DNA of 64,000 nucleotides from Thecamonas trahens ATCC 50062 (GCF_000142905.1 NW_013657621.1:15457-79456), one strand, 5' to 3'; positions 20,908-29,059 are shown, counted from the first letter of the stretch. A program made the numbers and translations. The notes: generated by a model from the letters alone, not told the origin.

Positions 20908-21345
20908 TTGACCCTTTACGGTACGGAATGGACGTATTTGTCCATCGCGCAAGCCGCGCTCTTCGACGCTCCACAGACGTCGCAACGTCCAAACAGTCGG
21001 CGATGAAGAGATGGACGCCGCGCGCGGCGCAAAAGGTCCGCGGCCGCAATCGCTTACCATGAAGCCTCCGGCAGGCGAGGCAGTCGCATCGCAGAGCGGC
21101 TTGTTGGGGAAGGTGGTGATGACGAGCAGCCGCTGCATAGGGACGCTTCCGCTTGCGCGACGGCGCGGAGCTGACGGCATTGGCGCCAGCAGTGAGGGCG
21201 TCGATGATGTCGTAGAGAAAAGCCAAGCGAGTCATGACGGGCGTGGGCTTGCGTCGGCGTAGAGCGCGTACGCGCTGATGAGCGCGGCGTCCAGAATCCA
21301 GTACAGGATGGCGTGCCACCTCTTGCGCGGCCACGCCGACCGGCA
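20908..21345 (-). mobile_element. piggyBac-like DNA transposon relic (transposase C-terminus, Cys-rich domain and one terminal repeat)
   Basis: Minus strand reads RKRWHAILYWILDAALISAYALY, then after a frameshift MTRLAFLYDIIDAL...HHHLPQQAALRCDCLACRRLHGKRLRPRTFCAARGVHLFIADC. Element end is TTGA|CCCTTT at 20908-20917 with an internal inverted repeat atggac/gtccat. Confidence 0.75.
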
Positions 21346-21600
21346 AGCTCGTCCGTCGCAAGACGTCCTCGCGCGCTCCCGTCCCGCCGCTGTGTGTTCA
21401 ACTCTGCTATGCTCTCCTTCCCGGTCCTCGGGGTCGTCAACTACAGGCGCCATCAGCGGCACCCAGTCGGCGGGGCGATCAGCCGGCGGCGTGATCATGA
21501 TCACGATGGTGATCGGGATCACGCCCCGCCGACGCACACGGCCACCCACCCGACGCTAGAGAGAGGACAGAGCAAGCTACGTTGCCCAAAGTCGGCAGTG

Positions 21601-24600
21601 ATGGAGTGGAGCGTATGGAGGATATGTGGTGTGGTTTTGGTGCTTGTGGGACTGGTAAACCAGGCAGGAGCGGTGTGCCATTGGTGCAATGTCTCGCTGC
21701 CACAACAAGTCGCCGTCCGTGTCTCCCGCCTCTCGACGCGCCGCTCGTCTTTTTTCGAGTCGGGCGCCGTGGCCATGCTCCGCGGTCTTCCTCGGACCAA
21801 ACTGCCTGCTGCTGAGCTTGCTGCCGGATCTTTTTCGGCTGAAGCTCTAGTCGCCTATGTCAAGGACATTCTCATCTTGATCCTTCTCTCGGCGGTGCTG
21901 ACTCTGGCTGCATGCTGCACTCCGTGCTGGTTTTATTCTTGCAGACGATGCGGGGCCAGCCGATGCTGTGGTGGTTCGGCTCCCAATCGCTCAGGCTGCA
22001 ATCTCTTTCCCATGCGCGACAAGCCGTGTCGCGGCTACTCCAAGAAAGAGCGCAGACTGCCGGCGGCTGCCATGACTGCCGCCGTCATCATCATCTTCTC
22101 CGCCGTCTCCTCGGGCACCTATTACAACGAGGTTGTCCATCAGGGCGTCGGCGATGTCTTTGACGACGCCCTCCTCGGCGCCACCGCCGTCAGCCAACAT
22201 GTCAACTTTATGGCTGACCTTGTCGAGGCGCTTGGCCTCGACGTCCAGGACGAGGTCGCCGCCGGCATTCCCGTCATCCTCGCCTCGGCCGCCAACACCT
22301 CGTTTGGTCTCGAGATCGAGGACTCGCTCTCGAACGAACTTGACGCACTCACGGGCTCCATCACCGACTGGATCGACGCGTCGACCCGCTCAGAGTCGGA
22401 CGAGTCGGCGGCCAGAACTCGGGCGTCGAGCGCCCACGCCGCCAACAGTGACGCACACGCCGCCCTCCAGCAAGCGCTCACGCCGCTGCTTGCCGCGCCC
22501 TCAGTCTCGCTCACGTTCGAGACAATATCATCAGGAAGCGTGACGCGCTCGTTCCCACGGCCGTACCCTGCACTCGCTGCCCAGCCGCTGCGGCCGGTGG
22601 CAAGTGCCGGCGACGCTGCGCTGGCGGCCGACCTCGGTGACCTGCCGGGCGTCATCGGCCAAGTTGACACTCTGGACGCCGTCATCGACGAGCGCGTTAC
22701 GGCAGTCAACGAGCTGCTCGAGCGCCAGCTCACCGAGGCGTTCGACAGAGCGCAGAGCAACATCGGGAGGGTGGCGTCGCGCATCCGGAACGTCACCGCG
22801 CCCGGCGGCGTCGTGCCTCAGACCGAGAAGCTCCTCGGACGGTTGCAGAATGTGGTGGTCAATGCCGACCGGCGGTACCGGTCGCCAATCTTCTTGGTGG
22901 TGGCATGGACGTCGCCGCTGGTGGTCATCCCGTCGATTGTGGGCCTCATCCTCGCCTTTTGGTGGTTCCGCCTCTCGTGCCCGCACACCACTGCCGCCGT
23001 CGGAGCCTTTGTCGTCCTCGCCCTCGTCATGGTCAACCTCACCGTGTACCTCCCGGTTGTCCTTGTCCTCGACGACTTTTGCACCGACGTCGACTTTATC
23101 GTCTTCTCAGCCCTCGACTCGGTCGAGCCCAACGCAACAACTGCGCTCCAGACCTGCATTGCCGACGAGAACCTCTTTGACGCATTTGACGTCTCTGCCA
23201 TCATCAGCGAGCCGCTGGCCAGCCTACGCTCCTCACTCGCCGACCACCTCAACGCCGTCCTCGACGTCAACTCGATTTTCCCGGACGAGTCCATCACCGG
23301 CGCCCGCCTCGCCACCGATGAGGACACCGAAGCCACTCTTGCCCGCCTCGACGCCCTGGACGCCGAGCTCGCTGCAGAAGCCGCGTACGCCGCCTCGGGC
23401 TCGGCCAACGTCACAACCTACAACGACACCCTCGCCGCCGTAGCCTCGGCTGGGGACGCGGATGCGCGTGCGGCCTGGGAAGCCGCTGTGGGTCTCGACA
23501 TTGCCGCCGCGCTTGACGCAGCGAACATCGCTCTGGCAAGCGCCGGCTACGATGCGGTCGTCTTTACTCTCGCCAACGTGACCGCCTTTAACGCCTCGGC
23601 CTACTCGGGCATCGGGCCGGCAGGTTTCGAGCTCGAGGTTCAGCTTGGGCTCAACGCCACGCTGACCGCCGTTGCCGACGCGCTCGCCGACGCGGCATCG
23701 AACGCTATGGTGATCTTTAGCGAGAGCGTGCTTCCGGCGCTCAGCGATGCAGCCGCGGAAGCTGCGGCCGGGCAGGCAAGCTCGGGCAGTGCCCGCGACG
23801 AGGCGAACGCGGCGGCGGCGCGCGCGGAGGCATCAGACGTCGCAGGCGAGTCGATCGACGCCCAGCTGCGGGCAGCGCTGCAGTCCAACCTTGATGATGC
23901 AGCCGAGGCGGCGTTGGCCATGCTTGACCGTGGCGTGACTATTGTCATTGCCGCGCTCCGCAGCGCAGCAACGTGCCGGTACGTCGGCCGGACATACAAC
24001 GCGTTCAAGACCGATGTGTGTGACTCTGTTCGCGGCGGCCTGTCTGTCCTCTGGGGCACGCTCGCTCTGCTCTCACTCACGTTTGTCACCGCCATCATTG
24101 CCGGCACCCTGCTCTCCAAGCGGGCAGGCTTCCTCTACCCGGAGGACAAGGTCGTCTCCAAGATGATGGCCAAGGTTCATGGTCTGTCATCGCCGGCCGA
24201 CTTTGCCGCCGCCCACGATGCCTCGCTCCGTTGCGGCTGCCTCTCGCGGCACCTGGCTGCCGCTGCCGGCGCTGTCGGCCTTCATCGGTCGGCCTCGGCG
24301 CCGTGCTCGCCGGTAGCTGCTGCCGCTGCCGCCAACATGACCTTTGCCTCACTGGCGGTGACGACTGGCGTGGCGCCGGCACCTCACGACCCGCTGGCGC
24401 TCTCGCGTTCGATGGCTTCGGCCGCCGACATTGCCGCCTCGCGCACAGCAGGCTACTCGTCGCTCGAGCACACCGAGTCTGGCGACGGCGACGGTGCCGC
24501 CGCTGCCACTGAGATGCACTCTGACTCGAGCTACGCCTCCGAGTACGTCAGCTCGTCGGCGGCCGAGTCGGGCATCGAGCTCGACGCCATCCGCTTTGAC

Positions 24601-27231
24601 AGCTTGCCGCCGCCAGCGCCGCCGACGTCGCTTCCGGCACAGGACTCGCCGTCGTCGACGACGGGTCTGACAGCGTGGTCGGGAGGCAGCTCCGTGCTTG
24701 CCAAAGCCGCCGCAGAGACCGGAGCTGCCGAGGAGCAGGTCGAGGAGATGGAGGTGGTGGTGACAGACTCGGTGGGAGGATCTGCGCGGCTGGTGATGGC
24801 GCACGACCCACCGCCGCTGACGGCCGAGCTTCGGGCGGCCGCCGAGGCGCTGCTCCCGCAGACGGCCGATGTCGAGGCTGCCGAAGCTGCGGCGGCCGGT
24901 GCCGTCCACAGCATGCGGTACACCCCGGTGGTGGCGGTCGACGTGAGCGGCGGGCGCATGGGGTTGGGCTATGCACACTCGGCCGATGTGGCGGCAGTCG
25001 ACGGAAGCCCAGCTCGCCCGCAGTACCTCGCCACGATCGACGCCACAGGCGGGATCGATGTCAACGAGCTGACGGCGCTCTCGCTGCGGATCTACACCCT
25101 CGCCGAGGCGGTGAGCTCGGGCGAGCTGGCCAGCTCTGCACCGATGTGGAATGAGCTCCCGCCAGTGGCGACCGCGGTGGCGCAGCTCTCGCCCCTCGCC
25201 CGAGCGCAGCTGTGCGAGGCGGTGCAGGAGCTCGACGCCGAGGCAGCGCGCAAGCTCCGCGCAGCGGCAGACGCACGCAGAGGAGTGCTTCGAGCAGGAT
25301 GGAGCAAGCCTAACTTGCGGATGATGCTGCAGCTGGTTGCGGCGGCGTGCGAGACGCCGCTGGAGGCCGATGCGCGGGTGCTCGCCGACTGTTGCGCCGG
25401 GCGTGGCGTGGCCGAGGACTGGTCGCCTGAGCTGGCGAGGCAAGTGGCGTGCTTCATCCTGGCCACGCACGCAGACCTGCCCGGGCTCGCGGCAGCAACG
25501 ACAGCGGCGTGTGGGTACGACGGCGAGCTCGACGGGCTTGTGGCCAGCTCGGAGTGGGGCGTTCGCGGAGCGACGAACTCGCTGGCGGCGGTGGCGGCGA
25601 GCGTCAGGGCAGCAAGCGTCAAGGCAGTGCTCGGCGATGAAGCCGAAGCCGCAGACGACGATGATGTGCTGCCACAAGCGGTTCGGAAGCTTGTGGGCGG
25701 CGGACGGCGGGCAGCGTCGCGGGTGCTGCATGAGGAGCAGGTGGAGGCCGACGCGCGCGCGCTGTACGAGGCCGGTGAGGGCAAGACGTTGACGACGGAC
25801 GTGCCTGTCTTTGTGGGTGTTTTTGTTCGAGCTTCGCCAGCACACCTCGCTGCCGTCTCCGCCGCCTACCGCAGCTTCTCGTTCTCGACGCTCATGGCGG
25901 CGCTCCGTGACGAGATCGACCCGCCGCTGCTGGACCTCCTCGCGGCGCTGCTGGATCCTGTAAGCGCGTGCGCGGCGCTGGTCCGCTACGCGCTGGACAC
26001 CATCAGGAACGACGGCGGCGCGCTGTTCGCCTTCCTGGCCACCCGGGCGCCACGCCCACTCCGCACTGCACTCCGCCCGGTCTTTCTGGAGCGGTTCTAC
26101 CTTCCGCTGCCGCGCGTGGTGTCTAGCGCGGTAGCCAACACGGCGCAGGCGGCGGTCGAGGCGCTGGTGGCGGCCGAGCCCGAGGTGGACGAGGCGGCTC
26201 AGGCGCTGCGCAAGCGCCTGGGCCAGCTCCATGTGAACGATGGCAAGGCCGTGGCGGCACTGGCGTCGCTGCCACGCTTTGTCCGGCTCGGGCTGGCTCT
26301 CGGCTACCGGCGATCGTACGGAGTGGCGCTGGCGACGGCGCTGAAGCAGCGGCTGGGGACACGGACGGCGGCGGTGACGGCGGCGGCGCTGCTGCCACGG
26401 CCGATAGCGGCAGCCAACGCGCTGCACCAATTGATCACCGAGGCCCGCGGCTCCAAGCACGCTGCCACTGCGTCGATCCTTGTGGTCTGCACCCTCCCAC
26501 ACAACGACGTGCTCGCTGCGGCGCGGGCGTACCGGCGGACATACGGCAGCGAGCTGCTGAGCGAGCTCGCGCGGTTCTTGCCCAAGCCACTGGTGGCAGG
26601 CCTCCGCGCCGTGGCCGACGCTGCCCTGCTGGACGTCTTCTCGGCGGCAAGCGCGGGCCGCTCGGACGATCTCATGGCGTCGGCGGCGGTGCTCCCGTTG
26701 GAGGCCGCGGTGGCCGAGGTGGAAGCGCTGAGCGCGTCCGGCAGGAGCAGCGCCGTGCTTGGTGCTGACGGCATTCTCGTCCCGCCGCTCTACGCCATGG
26801 TTGTCCACGCAGCCGCCAGGCGTGAGGTCGTCACCGACGCCATCCGACCGGTCCTGCCGGCTGTCGCGTCCGTGGCGCCGCTAGTGGCGCAGCTGGTGGA
26901 GGCGCTGGTGGACCCGGTGGCGTATGTGGGCAGCGCCGTCGTCGCCGTCGTCACGCGCAACGTGGTCAAGCGATGGTGGTCGCCCCACATCGAAGCGCTG
27001 ATACTTTCGGCGGCGGCAGCGCTTCCGCCAACAGAACTCTGGGCTCGGGTCCTTGGCGCCCACACCCATGAGCTCCGGCCGCGGCTCTCGGCTGCCCTCT
27101 TTGCCGCCCTCAAGCTCTCGCTCGACGGCGGCGCCGGCGGCGATGGGCTGGACGGCCAGCCAGGAAGCGACTCGACGGCCGAATTGGCTGACTACAGTGA
27201 CTCGATGGCGGCAACAACCCGGACGGCATAG
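21601..27231 (+). CDS. Prominin-like pentaspan membrane protein fused to C-terminal annexin repeats (~1876 aa)
   Basis: Signal peptide; TM1 followed by a Cys-rich loop (CCTPCWFYSCRRC..CCGG); TM2; large loop; TM3/TM4 plus DDFCTD; large loop ending TCRYVGRTYNAFKTDVCDSVRGGLSVLW; TM5. Annexin repeat DARALYEAGEGKTLTTDVPVFVGVFVRASPAHLAAVSAAY starts near 25750. Confidence 0.8.
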   Translation: MEWSVWRICGVVLVLVGLVNQAGAVCHWCNVSLPQQVAVRVSRLSTRRSSFFESGAVAMLRGLPRTKLPAAELAAGSFSAEALVAYVKDILILILLSAVLTLAACCTPCWFYSCRRCGASRCCGGSAPNRSGCNLFPMRDKPCRGYSKKERRLPAAAMTAAVIIIFSAVSSGTYYNEVVHQGVGDVFDDALLGATAVSQHVNFMADLVEALGLDVQDEVAAGIPVILASAANTSFGLEIEDSLSNELDALTGSITDWIDASTRSESDESAARTRASSAHAANSDAHAALQQALTPLLAAPSVSLTFETISSGSVTRSFPRPYPALAAQPLRPVASAGDAALAADLGDLPGVIGQVDTLDAVIDERVTAVNELLERQLTEAFDRAQSNIGRVASRIRNVTAPGGVVPQTEKLLGRLQNVVVNADRRYRSPIFLVVAWTSPLVVIPSIVGLILAFWWFRLSCPHTTAAVGAFVVLALVMVNLTVYLPVVLVLDDFCTDVDFIVFSALDSVEPNATTALQTCIADENLFDAFDVSAIISEPLASLRSSLADHLNAVLDVNSIFPDESITGARLATDEDTEATLARLDALDAELAAEAAYAASGSANVTTYNDTLAAVASAGDADARAAWEAAVGLDIAAALDAANIALASAGYDAVVFTLANVTAFNASAYSGIGPAGFELEVQLGLNATLTAVADALADAASNAMVIFSESVLPALSDAAAEAAAGQASSGSARDEANAAAARAEASDVAGESIDAQLRAALQSNLDDAAEAALAMLDRGVTIVIAALRSAATCRYVGRTYNAFKTDVCDSVRGGLSVLWGTLALLSLTFVTAIIAGTLLSKRAGFLYPEDKVVSKMMAKVHGLSSPADFAAAHDASLRCGCLSRHLAAAAGAVGLHRSASAPCSPVAAAAAANMTFASLAVTTGVAPAPHDPLALSRSMASAADIAASRTAGYSSLEHTESGDGDGAAAATEMHSDSSYASEYVSSSAAESGIELDAIRFDSLPPPAPPTSLPAQDSPSSTTGLTAWSGGSSVLAKAAAETGAAEEQVEEMEVVVTDSVGGSARLVMAHDPPPLTAELRAAAEALLPQTADVEAAEAAAAGAVHSMRYTPVVAVDVSGGRMGLGYAHSADVAAVDGSPARPQYLATIDATGGIDVNELTALSLRIYTLAEAVSSGELASSAPMWNELPPVATAVAQLSPLARAQLCEAVQELDAEAARKLRAAADARRGVLRAGWSKPNLRMMLQLVAAACETPLEADARVLADCCAGRGVAEDWSPELARQVACFILATHADLPGLAAATTAACGYDGELDGLVASSEWGVRGATNSLAAVAASVRAASVKAVLGDEAEAADDDDVLPQAVRKLVGGGRRAASRVLHEEQVEADARALYEAGEGKTLTTDVPVFVGVFVRASPAHLAAVSAAYRSFSFSTLMAALRDEIDPPLLDLLAALLDPVSACAALVRYALDTIRNDGGALFAFLATRAPRPLRTALRPVFLERFYLPLPRVVSSAVANTAQAAVEALVAAEPEVDEAAQALRKRLGQLHVNDGKAVAALASLPRFVRLGLALGYRRSYGVALATALKQRLGTRTAAVTAAALLPRPIAAANALHQLITEARGSKHAATASILVVCTLPHNDVLAAARAYRRTYGSELLSELARFLPKPLVAGLRAVADAALLDVFSAASAGRSDDLMASAAVLPLEAAVAEVEALSASGRSSAVLGADGILVPPLYAMVVHAAARREVVTDAIRPVLPAVASVAPLVAQLVEALVDPVAYVGSAVVAVVTRNVVKRWWSPHIEALILSAAAALPPTELWARVLGAHTHELRPRLSAALFAALKLSLDGGAGGDGLDGQPGSDSTAELADYSDSMAATTRTA

Positions 27232-28820
27232 TGGTCCGAGGGCGTGGCAAAGGAGATGGTGGCCGACGGCGGTGAGGCCGAGGCCGAGGCGGAGAACGGC
27301 GGTTCTGGTGGCGCGGCAAGGCCGAGAAGCGGCTCGGTGCCCATTCGCTCGGCGGATCGGAGGGCGATGCGGCGGAGAAAGACGCGATCAGGCCGCCACG
27401 GCTTGCGAAACCTGCGGCTACCCGGGTGGGTGGGCCCAGCGGCGGCGGCGGCGTCGGTGTAGCCCTCGAGGGCGGCAGCGAGCGAGGCACCCTCGGGCGA
27501 GTCGCCGATGTTGCAGTCGCCGGCGAGGAGGAGCGACGGCCAGAGGCCGATGGCCTCGACGCCGCAGCGCCAGGCCTCGAGGGTGTGGCGCGCAATGGCG
27601 ATCTGCATCTGGCGCATGGGCGCGGTGTCGTACATCGACTCAAGGTGGGCGGTGGCGGCGACGACGACCCGCGACGCGGTGCCGGCCACCCGCCAGGCGG
27701 CGGTCAGCAACCACCGGCCCATAACGGTTGGCAGCGGAGTGGCGAGCGCGAGGCCGCCGCGCCATCGCGACAGCATGAGCACGCCGTACTCGTTGAGGAC
27801 GTCGGCGGCGGTGTCTGGTGAGACACTCGCCGCGTAGCTGGCCCGGATGGCCGGCGCCGCGAGGAGGAAGGCGGCAAAGGCCGGCGTGGCCTCCTGGATG
27901 GCGACGAGGTCGGCGTCGGCGGCGAGTATGAGGTCGATGATGGCCGGCCAGCGGAGATCGTCGGCGTAGACCGGATAAAAGACATTGTAGCTGAGGATGG
28001 TGAGCTCATGGTCCCAGGGCTCGATCGGGTCTTCGGCCTCGTCGACGTAGACGGCGAAGTCAGGAGCCGGGAGCGCGGCGAGTTCGACTGATCGTCCGGC
28101 ATCAAGGACGGCCAGCTGGCGGACAAATCCCGGATTGGGCGCGATGGCTGGTCGGGCGGCCTTGACTTGGGCGTGGGCAGCGAGAAAGTCGAGGTCGCAG
28201 CTGCGCATGAGGTAGGCGATGACGCAGGCCGCCGAGCGGGAGACGCCCGCTGCGCAATGGATGATGACTGCGCGACCGGCGGTCCGGGCGGTGTCGATGG
28301 CTGCGCAAACGGCGTCGATGGGAAGCGCAACACAGGGCGCGTCAATGATGCCGATGTGGACAAAGTCTGGGCCCGGCGACGGAATGTCGGCGTACGCCGG
28401 CGGGGCCGAGGCGATCTCGGCTGCGACCGAGATGACGGTGACGGCGGCGGCCGGCGCGGCGCTAGCGGCCATGTCGATGTGGAACGGTGCGGCGGCGCCG
28501 ACGGCCGATGCAAGAAAGAGCGGGCCAAGGCTTGTGTCGTGATCAGCGTCGACAATGAGGTTGATCTCTGTGTCGACGAGGCCCGGCATGAGGAGCGCGG
28601 CCATGTCCTGATCAAGGACGACGTCGTCGATCTGGCCGATCAGAGCTCTGTCACGGACATCGGCTGCGGCGGCGAGGAGCAGATCGGGCGAATCAGGAAG
28701 CCAAGCGTCCGCAGCAGCGTGGTAGGCATACATGGCGAGTGGGGAGGAGGATGCGATCATTTCCGATGTGGTGGCGGCGTTGCGGGCGGCAGCGGCTGGC
28801 GAGGAGGACCACTTTGACAT
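27192..28820 (-). CDS. Dual-specificity phosphatase fused to an endonuclease/exonuclease/phosphatase (TDP2-like) domain
   Basis: DSP motifs VIIHCAAGVSRSAACVIAYLM and PNPGFVRQL; EEP motifs ILSYNV, IQE, TAHLES, AGDCN, RPDRVF, SDHYAV. Start could be 28820 or 28733. Confidence 0.88.
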   Translation of the reverse strand: MSKWSSSPAAAARNAATTSEMIASSSPLAMYAYHAAADAWLPDSPDLLLAAAADVRDRALIGQIDDVVLDQDMAALLMPGLVDTEINLIVDADHDTSLGPLFLASAVGAAAPFHIDMAASAAPAAAVTVISVAAEIASAPPAYADIPSPGPDFVHIGIIDAPCVALPIDAVCAAIDTARTAGRAVIIHCAAGVSRSAACVIAYLMRSCDLDFLAAHAQVKAARPAIAPNPGFVRQLAVLDAGRSVELAALPAPDFAVYVDEAEDPIEPWDHELTILSYNVFYPVYADDLRWPAIIDLILAADADLVAIQEATPAFAAFLLAAPAIRASYAASVSPDTAADVLNEYGVLMLSRWRGGLALATPLPTVMGRWLLTAAWRVAGTASRVVVAATAHLESMYDTAPMRQMQIAIARHTLEAWRCGVEAIGLWPSLLLAGDCNIGDSPEGASLAAALEGYTDAAAAAGPTHPGSRRFRKPWRPDRVFLRRIALRSAERMGTEPLLGLAAPPEPPFSASASASPPSATISFATPSDHYAVRVVAAIESL

Positions 28821-29059
28821 GGCCGAAAAAGGGCGTAAAGTGGGCAACCTGTTTGGGTGTGCAGGGCACGTGGGGATGAAGATAGATGGGAGGGAAGTGG
28901 ATGTGGTGCTCGGCGTGGGTGTGGAGAGAATTGAGAGTGGGGTGCGGTGTGTGTGGAGTGGGCAATGCCGGTGGTAGCGGGGGTGGAAGGGGAGGGGGAC
29001 GACAAAGCGACGGAAAAAAATGGAATGGAAGCGCTGGCGAAAGGGGGGAAGGCGACGTT

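What the first reader, a model, noticed from the sequence alone, without database searches (positions are those of the whole stretch)
21601..27231. Prominin-annexin fusion protein
Seen in one uninterrupted ORF: full 5-TM prominin/tweety-like topology (21601-~24130), a Ser/Ala-rich linker, then at least four annexin-like repeats (~25740-26620), one clear and the rest with degenerate Ca sites. Known: prominins shape cholesterol-rich protrusions, cilia and vesicles and normally have short tails; annexins are soluble Ca/phospholipid-binding membrane-repair proteins. I know of no described fusion of the two. Inference: a membrane-anchored annexin for protrusion shaping, tethering or repair.
Basis: partly seen in the sequence, partly recalled or inferred. 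Interest (0 to 1): 0.8.

Follow-up and report, generated by a model that had tools for sequence, protein, structure and literature searches.

The report
Membrane-anchored annexin on a Tweety/prominin-like pentaspan
One long gene of the protist Thecamonas trahens joins a five-pass membrane protein of the Tweety/prominin superfamily to four degenerate annexin repeats on its cytoplasmic tail, a domain combination I found nowhere else and not described in the papers I could search.

Summary
Window 21601-27231 (+) is one uninterrupted 1876-codon frame of Thecamonas trahens. It is public as the uncharacterized protein AMSG_10368, whose model starts 137 codons later.

- **Membrane half:** residues 1-834 have a signal-peptide-like start and five membrane helices in a 2+2+1 pattern, with outer loops of 260 and 326 residues. 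No Pfam Prominin or Tweety match reaches significance directly. A profile of six Thecamonas paralogues, one of which passes Pfam's Tweety cut-off, scores it 51 bits (best shuffle 3.8). The only outside relative leads to a protein that also passes the Tweety cut-off. So it belongs to the Tweety/prominin superfamily; "prominin" proper is not shown.
- **Annexin half:** residues 1383-1671 are four consecutive annexin repeats (annexin VI E 4e-12; fold Z 14). They run in the order III-IV-I-II. None keeps a canonical calcium site.
- **One gene:** codon-position GC stays in frame through the 550-residue linker.
- **Distribution:** no orthologue of the fusion was found, and the outside relatives have short tails.

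Function is inferred only. There are no transcript data. The scan had noted this same stretch from an overlapping window, not on other DNA.

The parts
21601..27231 (+). Whole coding frame as read here (1876 aa plus stop). The public model AMSG_10368 instead uses 22012-26978 plus 27164-27190.
21601..21678 (+). Signal-peptide-like hydrophobic N-terminus (aa 1-26)
   Evidence: Hydropathy; start-codon context; paralogues have the same feature
21868..21924 (+). TM1 (aa 90-108). It lies upstream of the annotated start codon.
   Evidence: aligns to TM1 of the paralogues
21925..22056 (+). Cytoplasmic loop 1 (aa 109-152): 7 Cys, 11 K+R against 2 D+E
22057..22113 (+). TM2 (aa 153-171)
22114..22893 (+). 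Outer loop 1 (aa 172-431, 260 aa). Helical in a low-confidence model; 2 N-glycosylation sequons.
22894..23067 (+). TM3, a short cytoplasmic turn and TM4 (aa 432-489), followed by the conserved LP...D.C motif
23068..24045 (+). Outer loop 2 (aa 490-815, 326 aa). It has 6 sequons, 4 Cys, and the conserved A.C..G..Y..FK...C motif before TM5.
24046..24102 (+). TM5 (aa 816-834), followed by the conserved L.KR
24103..25746 (+). Cytoplasmic linker (aa 835-1382), Ala/Ser/Leu-rich, with no recognisable domain. Five short helices are predicted at aa ~1236-1304 (pLDDT 62-71).
25747..25950 (+). Annexin repeat T3 (aa 1383-1450), of repeat-III type (AGEGKTLTTD)
25966..26166 (+). Annexin repeat T4 (aa 1456-1522), of repeat-IV type
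26191..26388 (+). Annexin repeat T5 (aa 1531-1596), of repeat-I type
26407..26613 (+). Annexin repeat T6 (aa 1603-1671), of repeat-II type
26614..27228 (+). C-terminal 205 aa with no detectable family
26979..27163 (+). 185-nt GT..AG intron of the public model, unverified. If it is spliced, the protein ends WWKRLDGRIG at 27190.

Best explanation
This is one gene of Thecamonas trahens encoding a polytopic plasma-membrane-type glycoprotein of about 1870 aa.

The N-terminal 834 aa are a divergent member of the Tweety/prominin pentaspan superfamily. They comprise a signal peptide, TM1, a Cys-rich basic cytoplasmic loop, TM2, a 260-aa outer loop, TM3/TM4, a 326-aa outer loop with conserved cysteines, and TM5. 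The module belongs to a small Thecamonas paralogue family. This topology places the 1040-aa tail in the cytoplasm.

The tail is a ~550-aa low-complexity linker, then a block of four annexin repeats in the order III-IV-I-II that has lost the canonical type II calcium sites, then ~200 aa of unknown fold.

Inferred mechanism: the pentaspan sits in curved or protrusive membrane, as Prom1 and Ttyh1 do. It holds an annexin-like peripheral lipid- or cytoskeleton-binding module on a long flexible tether at the inner leaflet of the same membrane. Annexin recruitment is then constitutive and local rather than triggered by calcium.

Shown here: the single frame, the topology signals, and homology of both halves. 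Inferred: subcellular location, lipid binding, and any role in protrusions, vesicle release or repair.
For: - **Single continuous coding signal:**
- **Public model:** a single-gene model contains both halves.
- **Pentaspan topology:** five helices in a 2+2+1 pattern. There are 9 N-glycosylation sequons in 649 predicted outer residues against 1 in the 1042-aa tail. The basic Cys-rich loop 1 fits the positive-inside rule.
- **Homology of the membrane half:** a profile of six Thecamonas paralogues, with the query excluded, scores it 51.0 bits in three colinear pieces; the best of 500 shuffles scores 3.8. Paralogue C24 passes the Pfam Tweety cut-off (40.5 against 31.8). Others give sub-threshold Prominin hits on the TM1-TM2 region.
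- **Outside relative:** a search of 1.84 billion representatives gives one hit, P0002, at E 5e-4 with two colinear motifs. Its cluster mate P0004 hits P0005 at E 5e-30, and P0005 passes Tweety at 44.4 bits.
- **Annexin half:** Pfam 28.1 bits against a cut-off of 25 on the tail alone. PDB annexin VI E 4e-12. Repeats T5-T6 alone hit annexin A13 at E 6e-5, and all 12 top hits are annexins. 27% identity to the Thecamonas 8-repeat annexin, E 3e-11. The model of T3-T4 superposes on annexins at Z 13-14, rmsd 2-2.5 A over ~145 residues.
Against: - No transcript or protein evidence is available.
- The public model differs at both ends.
- The first ~100 codons have a weak codon-position signal, GC3 0.60.
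- There is no direct Pfam or PDB hit for the membrane half, and its single-sequence model was useless at pLDDT 41.
- All four annexin repeats lack GxGT...D/E, so annexin-type lipid binding may be lost.
- T5-T6 and both flanks were predicted with low confidence.
- No orthologue exists to show that the fusion is conserved by selection.
Confidence: 0.7

Rival explanations
1. There are two genes or two transcripts. The pentaspan would end soon after TM5, and a separate soluble annexin-like protein would be made from an internal start. The open frame between them would be an accident of 69% GC.
For: GC-rich DNA here gives long accidental frames; for example, the antisense ORF 24349-26808 runs 819 aa. 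The linker has no recognisable domain. The relatives P0004 and P0005 stop 30-60 aa after TM5.
Against: The in-frame GC3 of 0.76-0.86 with low GC2 persists across all linker windows in the same frame as both flanks. There is no stop in 1640 nt. The public annotation calls one gene.
Confidence: 0.12
2. The fusion is real, but the annexin block is a decayed relic. It would now be only a helical scaffold or protein-interaction domain with no lipid binding, and the gene a lineage-specific oddity of little functional meaning.
For: None of the four repeats keeps the type II calcium loop with its acidic partner, while the Thecamonas free annexins do. Only four repeats, in a permuted III-IV-I-II order, are detectable, and the flanks are unrecognisable. 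No orthologue or paralogous tail exists.
Against: The coding signal in the repeats is strong, with GC3 0.81-0.88. The helix-forming pattern is retained well enough for sequence and fold matches. Calcium-independent annexins are known (my own knowledge; not tested here).
Confidence: 0.3
3. The membrane half is a true prominin orthologue rather than a Tweety-side relative.
For: It has a signal peptide, outer loops of 260 and 326 aa (Prom ~280 against Ttyh ~120 in PMC11405016), a Cys-rich stretch after TM1, and a Trp at the outer end of TM5. The nearest ESM-feature clusters include one with 14% Prominin-annotated members.
Against: PF05478 gives no hit at E<=10. Through intermediates, the family members that reach a curated cut-off pass Tweety, not Prominin. 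Cytoplasmic loop 1 is 44 aa against the <25 aa criterion. The Trp is not shared by the paralogues or by P0004 and P0005.
Confidence: 0.15

Closest known systems
Tweety homologues (TTYH1-3; Pfam PF04906)
   Same: Five membrane helices in a 2+2+1 pattern, helical outer loops with conserved cysteines, and a cytoplasmic C-tail. The homology is transitive: Thecamonas paralogue C24 and the metagenomic relative P0005 pass the Pfam cut-off.
   Different: The outer loops are two to three times longer. It has a signal-peptide-like start and a 1040-aa tail with annexin repeats. The direct Pfam score is only ~7 bits.
Prominins (CD133/PROM1, PROM2; Pfam PF05478)
   Same: A signal peptide plus a pentaspan, two outer loops of ~260-330 aa carrying N-glycosylation sequons, and a Cys-rich segment after TM1. 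Paralogues give sub-threshold Prominin hits on TM1-TM2.
   Different: No sequence match for this protein itself. Loop 1 is too long for the published criteria (PMC11405016). Prominin tails are short and carry no annexin.
Annexins (Pfam PF00191), especially eight-repeat annexins such as annexin A6 and the Thecamonas C13 annexin
   Same: ~70-aa five-helix repeats in tandem at ~73-aa spacing. The best matches are annexin VI, and repeats 7-8 of the organism's own 8-repeat annexin.
   Different: It is covalently anchored to a polytopic membrane domain. Only four repeats are detectable, in the order III-IV-I-II, and there is no intact type II calcium site.
Bacterial annexins with predicted membrane anchors (Kodavali et al. 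2014, PMC3894181)
   Same: Annexin repeats joined to predicted transmembrane segments and other domains.
   Different: Those are bacterial, with single anchors and toxin or enzyme domains. That paper states that no such additional domains had been described in eukaryotic annexins.

Membership tests
Tweety (PF04906) | Score at or above Pfam's gathering cut-off (31.8 bits) | tested here: not met
   Direct score 7.1-7.6 bits, E ~2. It is met only by relatives: C24 at 40.5 bits and P0005 at 44.4 bits.
Tweety (PF04906) | Significant homology to proteins that are members | tested here: met
   51.0 bits to a profile of six Thecamonas paralogues including C24, against a shuffle maximum of 3.8. The chain is query-P0002 E 5e-4, then P0004-P0005 E 5e-30.
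Tweety / Prominin superfamily | Five transmembrane helices in a 2+2+1 pattern, N-terminus outside and C-terminus inside | tested here: met
   Hydropathy peaks. The distribution of sequons and charge fits this orientation. No dedicated topology predictor was available.
Prominin (PF05478; criteria of PMC11405016) | Homology to annotated metazoan prominins | tested here: not met
   No PF05478 hit at E<=10 on the whole protein or on pieces. The genome-wide PF05478 search does not hit this locus.
Prominin (PF05478; criteria of PMC11405016) | Two large outer loops (the paper gives ~280 aa in one place and >300 aa in another) and two small inner loops (<25 aa) | tested here: inconclusive
   Outer loops are 260 and 326 aa. 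Inner loop 2 is ~14 aa, but inner loop 1 is 44 aa.
Prominin (PF05478; criteria of PMC11405016) | Conserved Trp in TM5 (human W795) | tested here: inconclusive
   W821 sits at the outer end of TM5. No alignment to a prominin could be made, and the Trp is absent from the paralogues and from P0004 and P0005.
Annexin (PF00191) | Score at or above Pfam's gathering cut-off (25 bits) | tested here: met
   28.1 bits, E 2e-6, on aa 1301-1876. The whole protein scores only 22.7 bits.
Annexin (PF00191) | Tandem array of four ~70-aa repeats forming the core | tested here: met
   Four repeats at ~73-aa spacing. Each pair is supported independently by PDB annexins. The order III-IV-I-II is atypical.
Annexin (PF00191) | Five-helix annexin repeat fold | tested here: met
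   For T3-T4 only: Z 13-14, rmsd 2-2.5 A, ~145 residues aligned, pLDDT 70-91. Annexin rows were in the input alignment at that spot. T5-T6 came out at low confidence.
Annexin (PF00191) | Type II calcium site: GxGT loop plus an acidic residue ~38-40 positions downstream | tested here: not met
   The loops read KTLTT, DTIRN, GQLHV and EARGS. Only T3 keeps the acidic residue.
Annexin (PF00191) | Binding to acidic phospholipids | not testable with these tools
   Needs a liposome assay.

The most novel reading that the evidence does not exclude
The fusion is a natural 'Rosetta stone'. In the lineage next to animals and fungi, a membrane-bending Tweety/prominin pentaspan became hard-wired to an annexin. 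This would mean the two families work together at curved or vesiculating membrane in general, and that free annexins are partners of TTYH and prominin in animals too. It would also be the first eukaryotic annexin that is an integral membrane protein by design.
Probability: 0.15. Interest if true: 0.7.

Novelty: new variant of a known kind. Interest (0 to 1): 0.45.

Why it matters
Both families act on membrane shape: prominin and Ttyh1 drive vesicle formation (PMC11405016), and annexins bind and repair membranes. Their molecular partners remain poorly defined. A natural covalent fusion gives a concrete, testable hypothesis of cooperation between them.

It would also extend annexin architecture to an integral-membrane form, which a 2014 survey said had not been described in eukaryotes (PMC3894181).

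It further shows that Thecamonas, a close outgroup of animals and fungi, carries a small family of Tweety/prominin-like pentaspans. That is useful for rooting the two animal families.

The weight is limited because the fusion is seen in one species only, without transcript evidence and with calcium sites lost.

Tried and rejected
- **Pfam on the membrane half:** Prominin and Tweety on the whole half and on three pieces gave nothing significant.
- **PDB sequence search of the membrane half:** nothing.
- **Single-sequence AlphaFold of aa 1-860:** pLDDT 41. Foldseek on it returned only designed helical bundles, which is meaningless.
- **The search for homologous proteins:** the alignment A1 returned nothing at all. 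The first search was saturated by Ala-rich words.
- **Metagenome scan with alignment A2:** 88 pattern matches, none confirmed.
- **Exact look-ups of the 1876-aa and 1940-aa products:** not on record, so no transcript-derived contig was found.
- **Eight-repeat hypothesis for the tail:** hhalign and PDB searches of the flanks aa 1180-1382 and 1672-1876 found no annexin signal. Only a five-helix prediction at aa 1236-1304 with pLDDT 62-71 hints at it. I do not claim it.
- **Antisense 819-aa ORF 24349-26808:** rejected as a GC shadow frame. Its codon positions mirror the sense frame, and the annexin matches are on the + strand.
- **W821 as the prominin Trp:** not claimed, because it is not conserved in relatives.
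- **Spliced model:** It was used only as the public protein P0001.
- **Human sequence:** nothing here is human.

Full report
**What is there.**
The window is Thecamonas trahens ATCC 50062, contig C59 of the assembly. Frame 21313-27231 (+) is open throughout and holds no N. The first ATG with a good context is 21601 (G at -3, G at +4) and gives 1876 aa.

Third-position GC in this frame is 0.76-0.88, with second-position GC lowest. This holds in every 300-nt window from about aa 205 to 1800, including the low-complexity middle. So the two halves share one coding frame with no sign of a break. The signal is weak in the first ~100 codons (GC3 0.60) and in the last ~70.

**Gene model.**
The public protein AMSG_10368 / XP_013753539.1 (P0001, 1664 aa) is identical to ORF residues 138-1793. 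It differs from my reading in two ways.

- *Start.* It begins at Met138 (window 22012), which removes the signal-peptide-like segment and TM1. I think that start is too late. The six Thecamonas paralogues all have a hydrophobic N-terminus, then TM1, then a Cys-rich basic loop, then TM2. Residues 77-133, upstream of Met138, alone score 12.2 bits against the paralogue profile, with the best of 300 shuffles at 2.6. Met138 falls in the middle of a conserved cytoplasmic loop.
- *End.* It removes a 185-nt GT..AG intron (26979-27163) and ends WWKRLDGRIG at 27190. I cannot decide this without RNA. Read spliced, it stops just short of that ORF.

**Membrane half (aa 1-834).**
Hydropathy gives a signal-like segment at aa 8-26 and helices at 90-108, 153-171, 432-450, 465-489 and 816-834. 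Several features fit an N-out, C-in orientation:

- The predicted outer segments hold 9 N-x-S/T sequons in 649 aa; the 1042-aa tail holds 1.
- Cytoplasmic loop 1 has 7 Cys and 11 K+R against 2 D+E.
- Outer loop 2 has four Cys at positions conserved in relatives.

Direct family searches fail. Pfam finds no Prominin and only ~7 bits of Tweety, and PDB sequences give nothing.

A filter-free phmmer search over 1.84 billion representatives finds only the protein itself and P0002, a metagenomic fragment (E 5e-4). P0002 matches in two colinear blocks, TM3-TM4 plus 'LP...D.C' and 'A.C..G..Y..FK...C' plus TM5. Its cluster mate P0004 hits P0005 at E 5e-30. P0005 passes Pfam Tweety (44.4 against a cut-off of 31.8) and gives a sub-threshold Prominin hit of 26.8 bits.

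Within the Thecamonas genome I found six further pentaspans.

| Contig | Pfam result |
|---|---|
| C24 | Tweety 40.5 bits (passes); Prominin 20.2 bits |
| C53 | Tweety 17.6 bits |
| C54 | Tweety 9.6 bits |
| C4 | Prominin 17.7 bits, on the TM1-TM2 region |
| C14 | Prominin 19.6 bits, on the TM1-TM2 region |
| C10 | Prominin 14.8 bits, on the TM1-TM2 region |

A profile built from these six, without the query, scores the query 51.0 bits in three colinear pieces: aa 78-209, 430-523 and 780-841. The best of 500 composition-matched shuffles scores 3.8.

Language-model features point the same way, with nearest clusters partly annotated Prominin or Tweety. That is a lead only.

My conclusion is that this is a divergent member of the Tweety/prominin superfamily. 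The two families are treated as distant homologues in PMC11405016. In size and layout it looks more like a prominin. By sequence, the only curated family reached is Tweety.

**Annexin half.**
- *Pfam.* Annexin scores 22.7 bits on the whole protein and 28.1 bits (cut-off 25) on aa 1301-1876.
- *PDB sequences.* Annexin VI scores E 4e-12, followed by dozens of annexins. Residues ~1374-1513 align to repeats III-IV. Residues 1525-1680 searched alone hit annexin A13 (E 6e-5), then A7 and A8, always on repeats I-II, and all 12 top hits are annexins.
- *Own genome.* The Thecamonas 8-repeat annexin on C13 aligns by its repeats 7-8 at 27% identity, E 3e-11.
- *Repeat count.* A repeat profile places four consecutive units at 1383-1450, 1456-1522, 1531-1596 and 1603-1671.
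- *Structure.* An AlphaFold model of aa 1090-1876 is poor overall (pLDDT 49.5) but confident over T3-T4 (70-91). There it superposes on annexins at Z 13-14, rmsd 2-2.5 A, ~145 residues. All 99 Foldseek hits with E<=0.001 that I saw listed are annexins. As a caveat, annexin rows were in the input alignment at that spot.
- *Calcium sites.* The type II site is not intact in any repeat. The loops read KTLTT, DTIRN, GQLHV and EARGS, against KGLGT in the organism's free annexins. Only T3 keeps the acidic partner.
- *Flanks.* aa 1180-1382 and 1672-1876 show no annexin signal.

The III-IV-I-II order would fit the middle of a decayed eight-repeat array, but that is speculation.

**Distribution and literature.**
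I found no orthologue of the fusion. The protein is alone in its 90% cluster. No long relative of the membrane half exists in either protein collection. The only outside relatives end 30-60 aa after TM5 at real stop codons. No second copy of the tail exists in the genome.

Full-text searches found no paper on this gene, on Thecamonas with prominin or Tweety, or on a membrane-anchored eukaryotic annexin. Kodavali et al. 2014 state that extra domains and transmembrane regions had not been described in eukaryotic annexins.

**How it probably works (inferred).**
The topology puts the annexin block in the cytoplasm, its normal compartment, about 550 disordered residues from the membrane. The likeliest role is a curvature- or protrusion-associated pentaspan that carries a permanently tethered annexin-like module. 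That module would bind the inner leaflet or cortical partners.

With the calcium loops gone, binding would be independent of calcium, or the module may serve only as a scaffold. I rate the architecture at about 0.85-0.9 and this functional picture at about 0.3.

**Verdict.**
The finding is real and correctly located. The family name needs softening from prominin to the Tweety/prominin superfamily. The architecture is new as far as I could search, but it is seen in one species and lacks expression data.

Noticed in passing
G000 contigs C24:371230-371961, C53:248519-249097, C54:222191-222469, C4:54593-54952, C14:193689-193946, C10:462764-463009 (loci L008, L010, L025, L005, L004, L024): Thecamonas carries at least six further Tweety/prominin-like pentaspans. 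All have a hydrophobic N-terminus, a Cys-rich loop after TM1, and a G.KRF motif after TM5. One passes the Pfam Tweety cut-off; several give sub-threshold Prominin hits.
   Followed up: partly
G000 C13:308019-309803 (L012, L013): A conventional annexin with eight Pfam-detected repeats in one 833-aa open frame, the same repeat count as annexin A6. A second annexin lies on C44:170461-170868.
   Followed up: partly
window 21601-22011: The public gene model AMSG_10368 starts at Met138 and so drops a signal-peptide-like segment and TM1, which the paralogues conserve. The start is probably mis-annotated.
   Followed up: yes
window 27192-27231: If the frame is read unspliced, it overlaps the stop-proximal end of the convergent minus-strand ORF 27192-28847 by 40 nt. 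The annotated 185-nt intron would remove the overlap.
   Followed up: partly
window 24349-26808 (-): An 819-aa antisense open frame lies opposite the linker and the annexin repeats. Its codon positions mirror the sense frame, so it is most likely a GC-rich shadow ORF.
   Followed up: partly
L029:4001-5776 and L030:2-1402 (JGI metagenomes 3300043418, 3300030743): Uncultured-eukaryote relatives of the membrane half (P0004, P0005) have short tails. They share the LP...D.C and A.C..G..Y..FK...C motifs and may define a protist subfamily between Tweety and prominin.
   Followed up: partly
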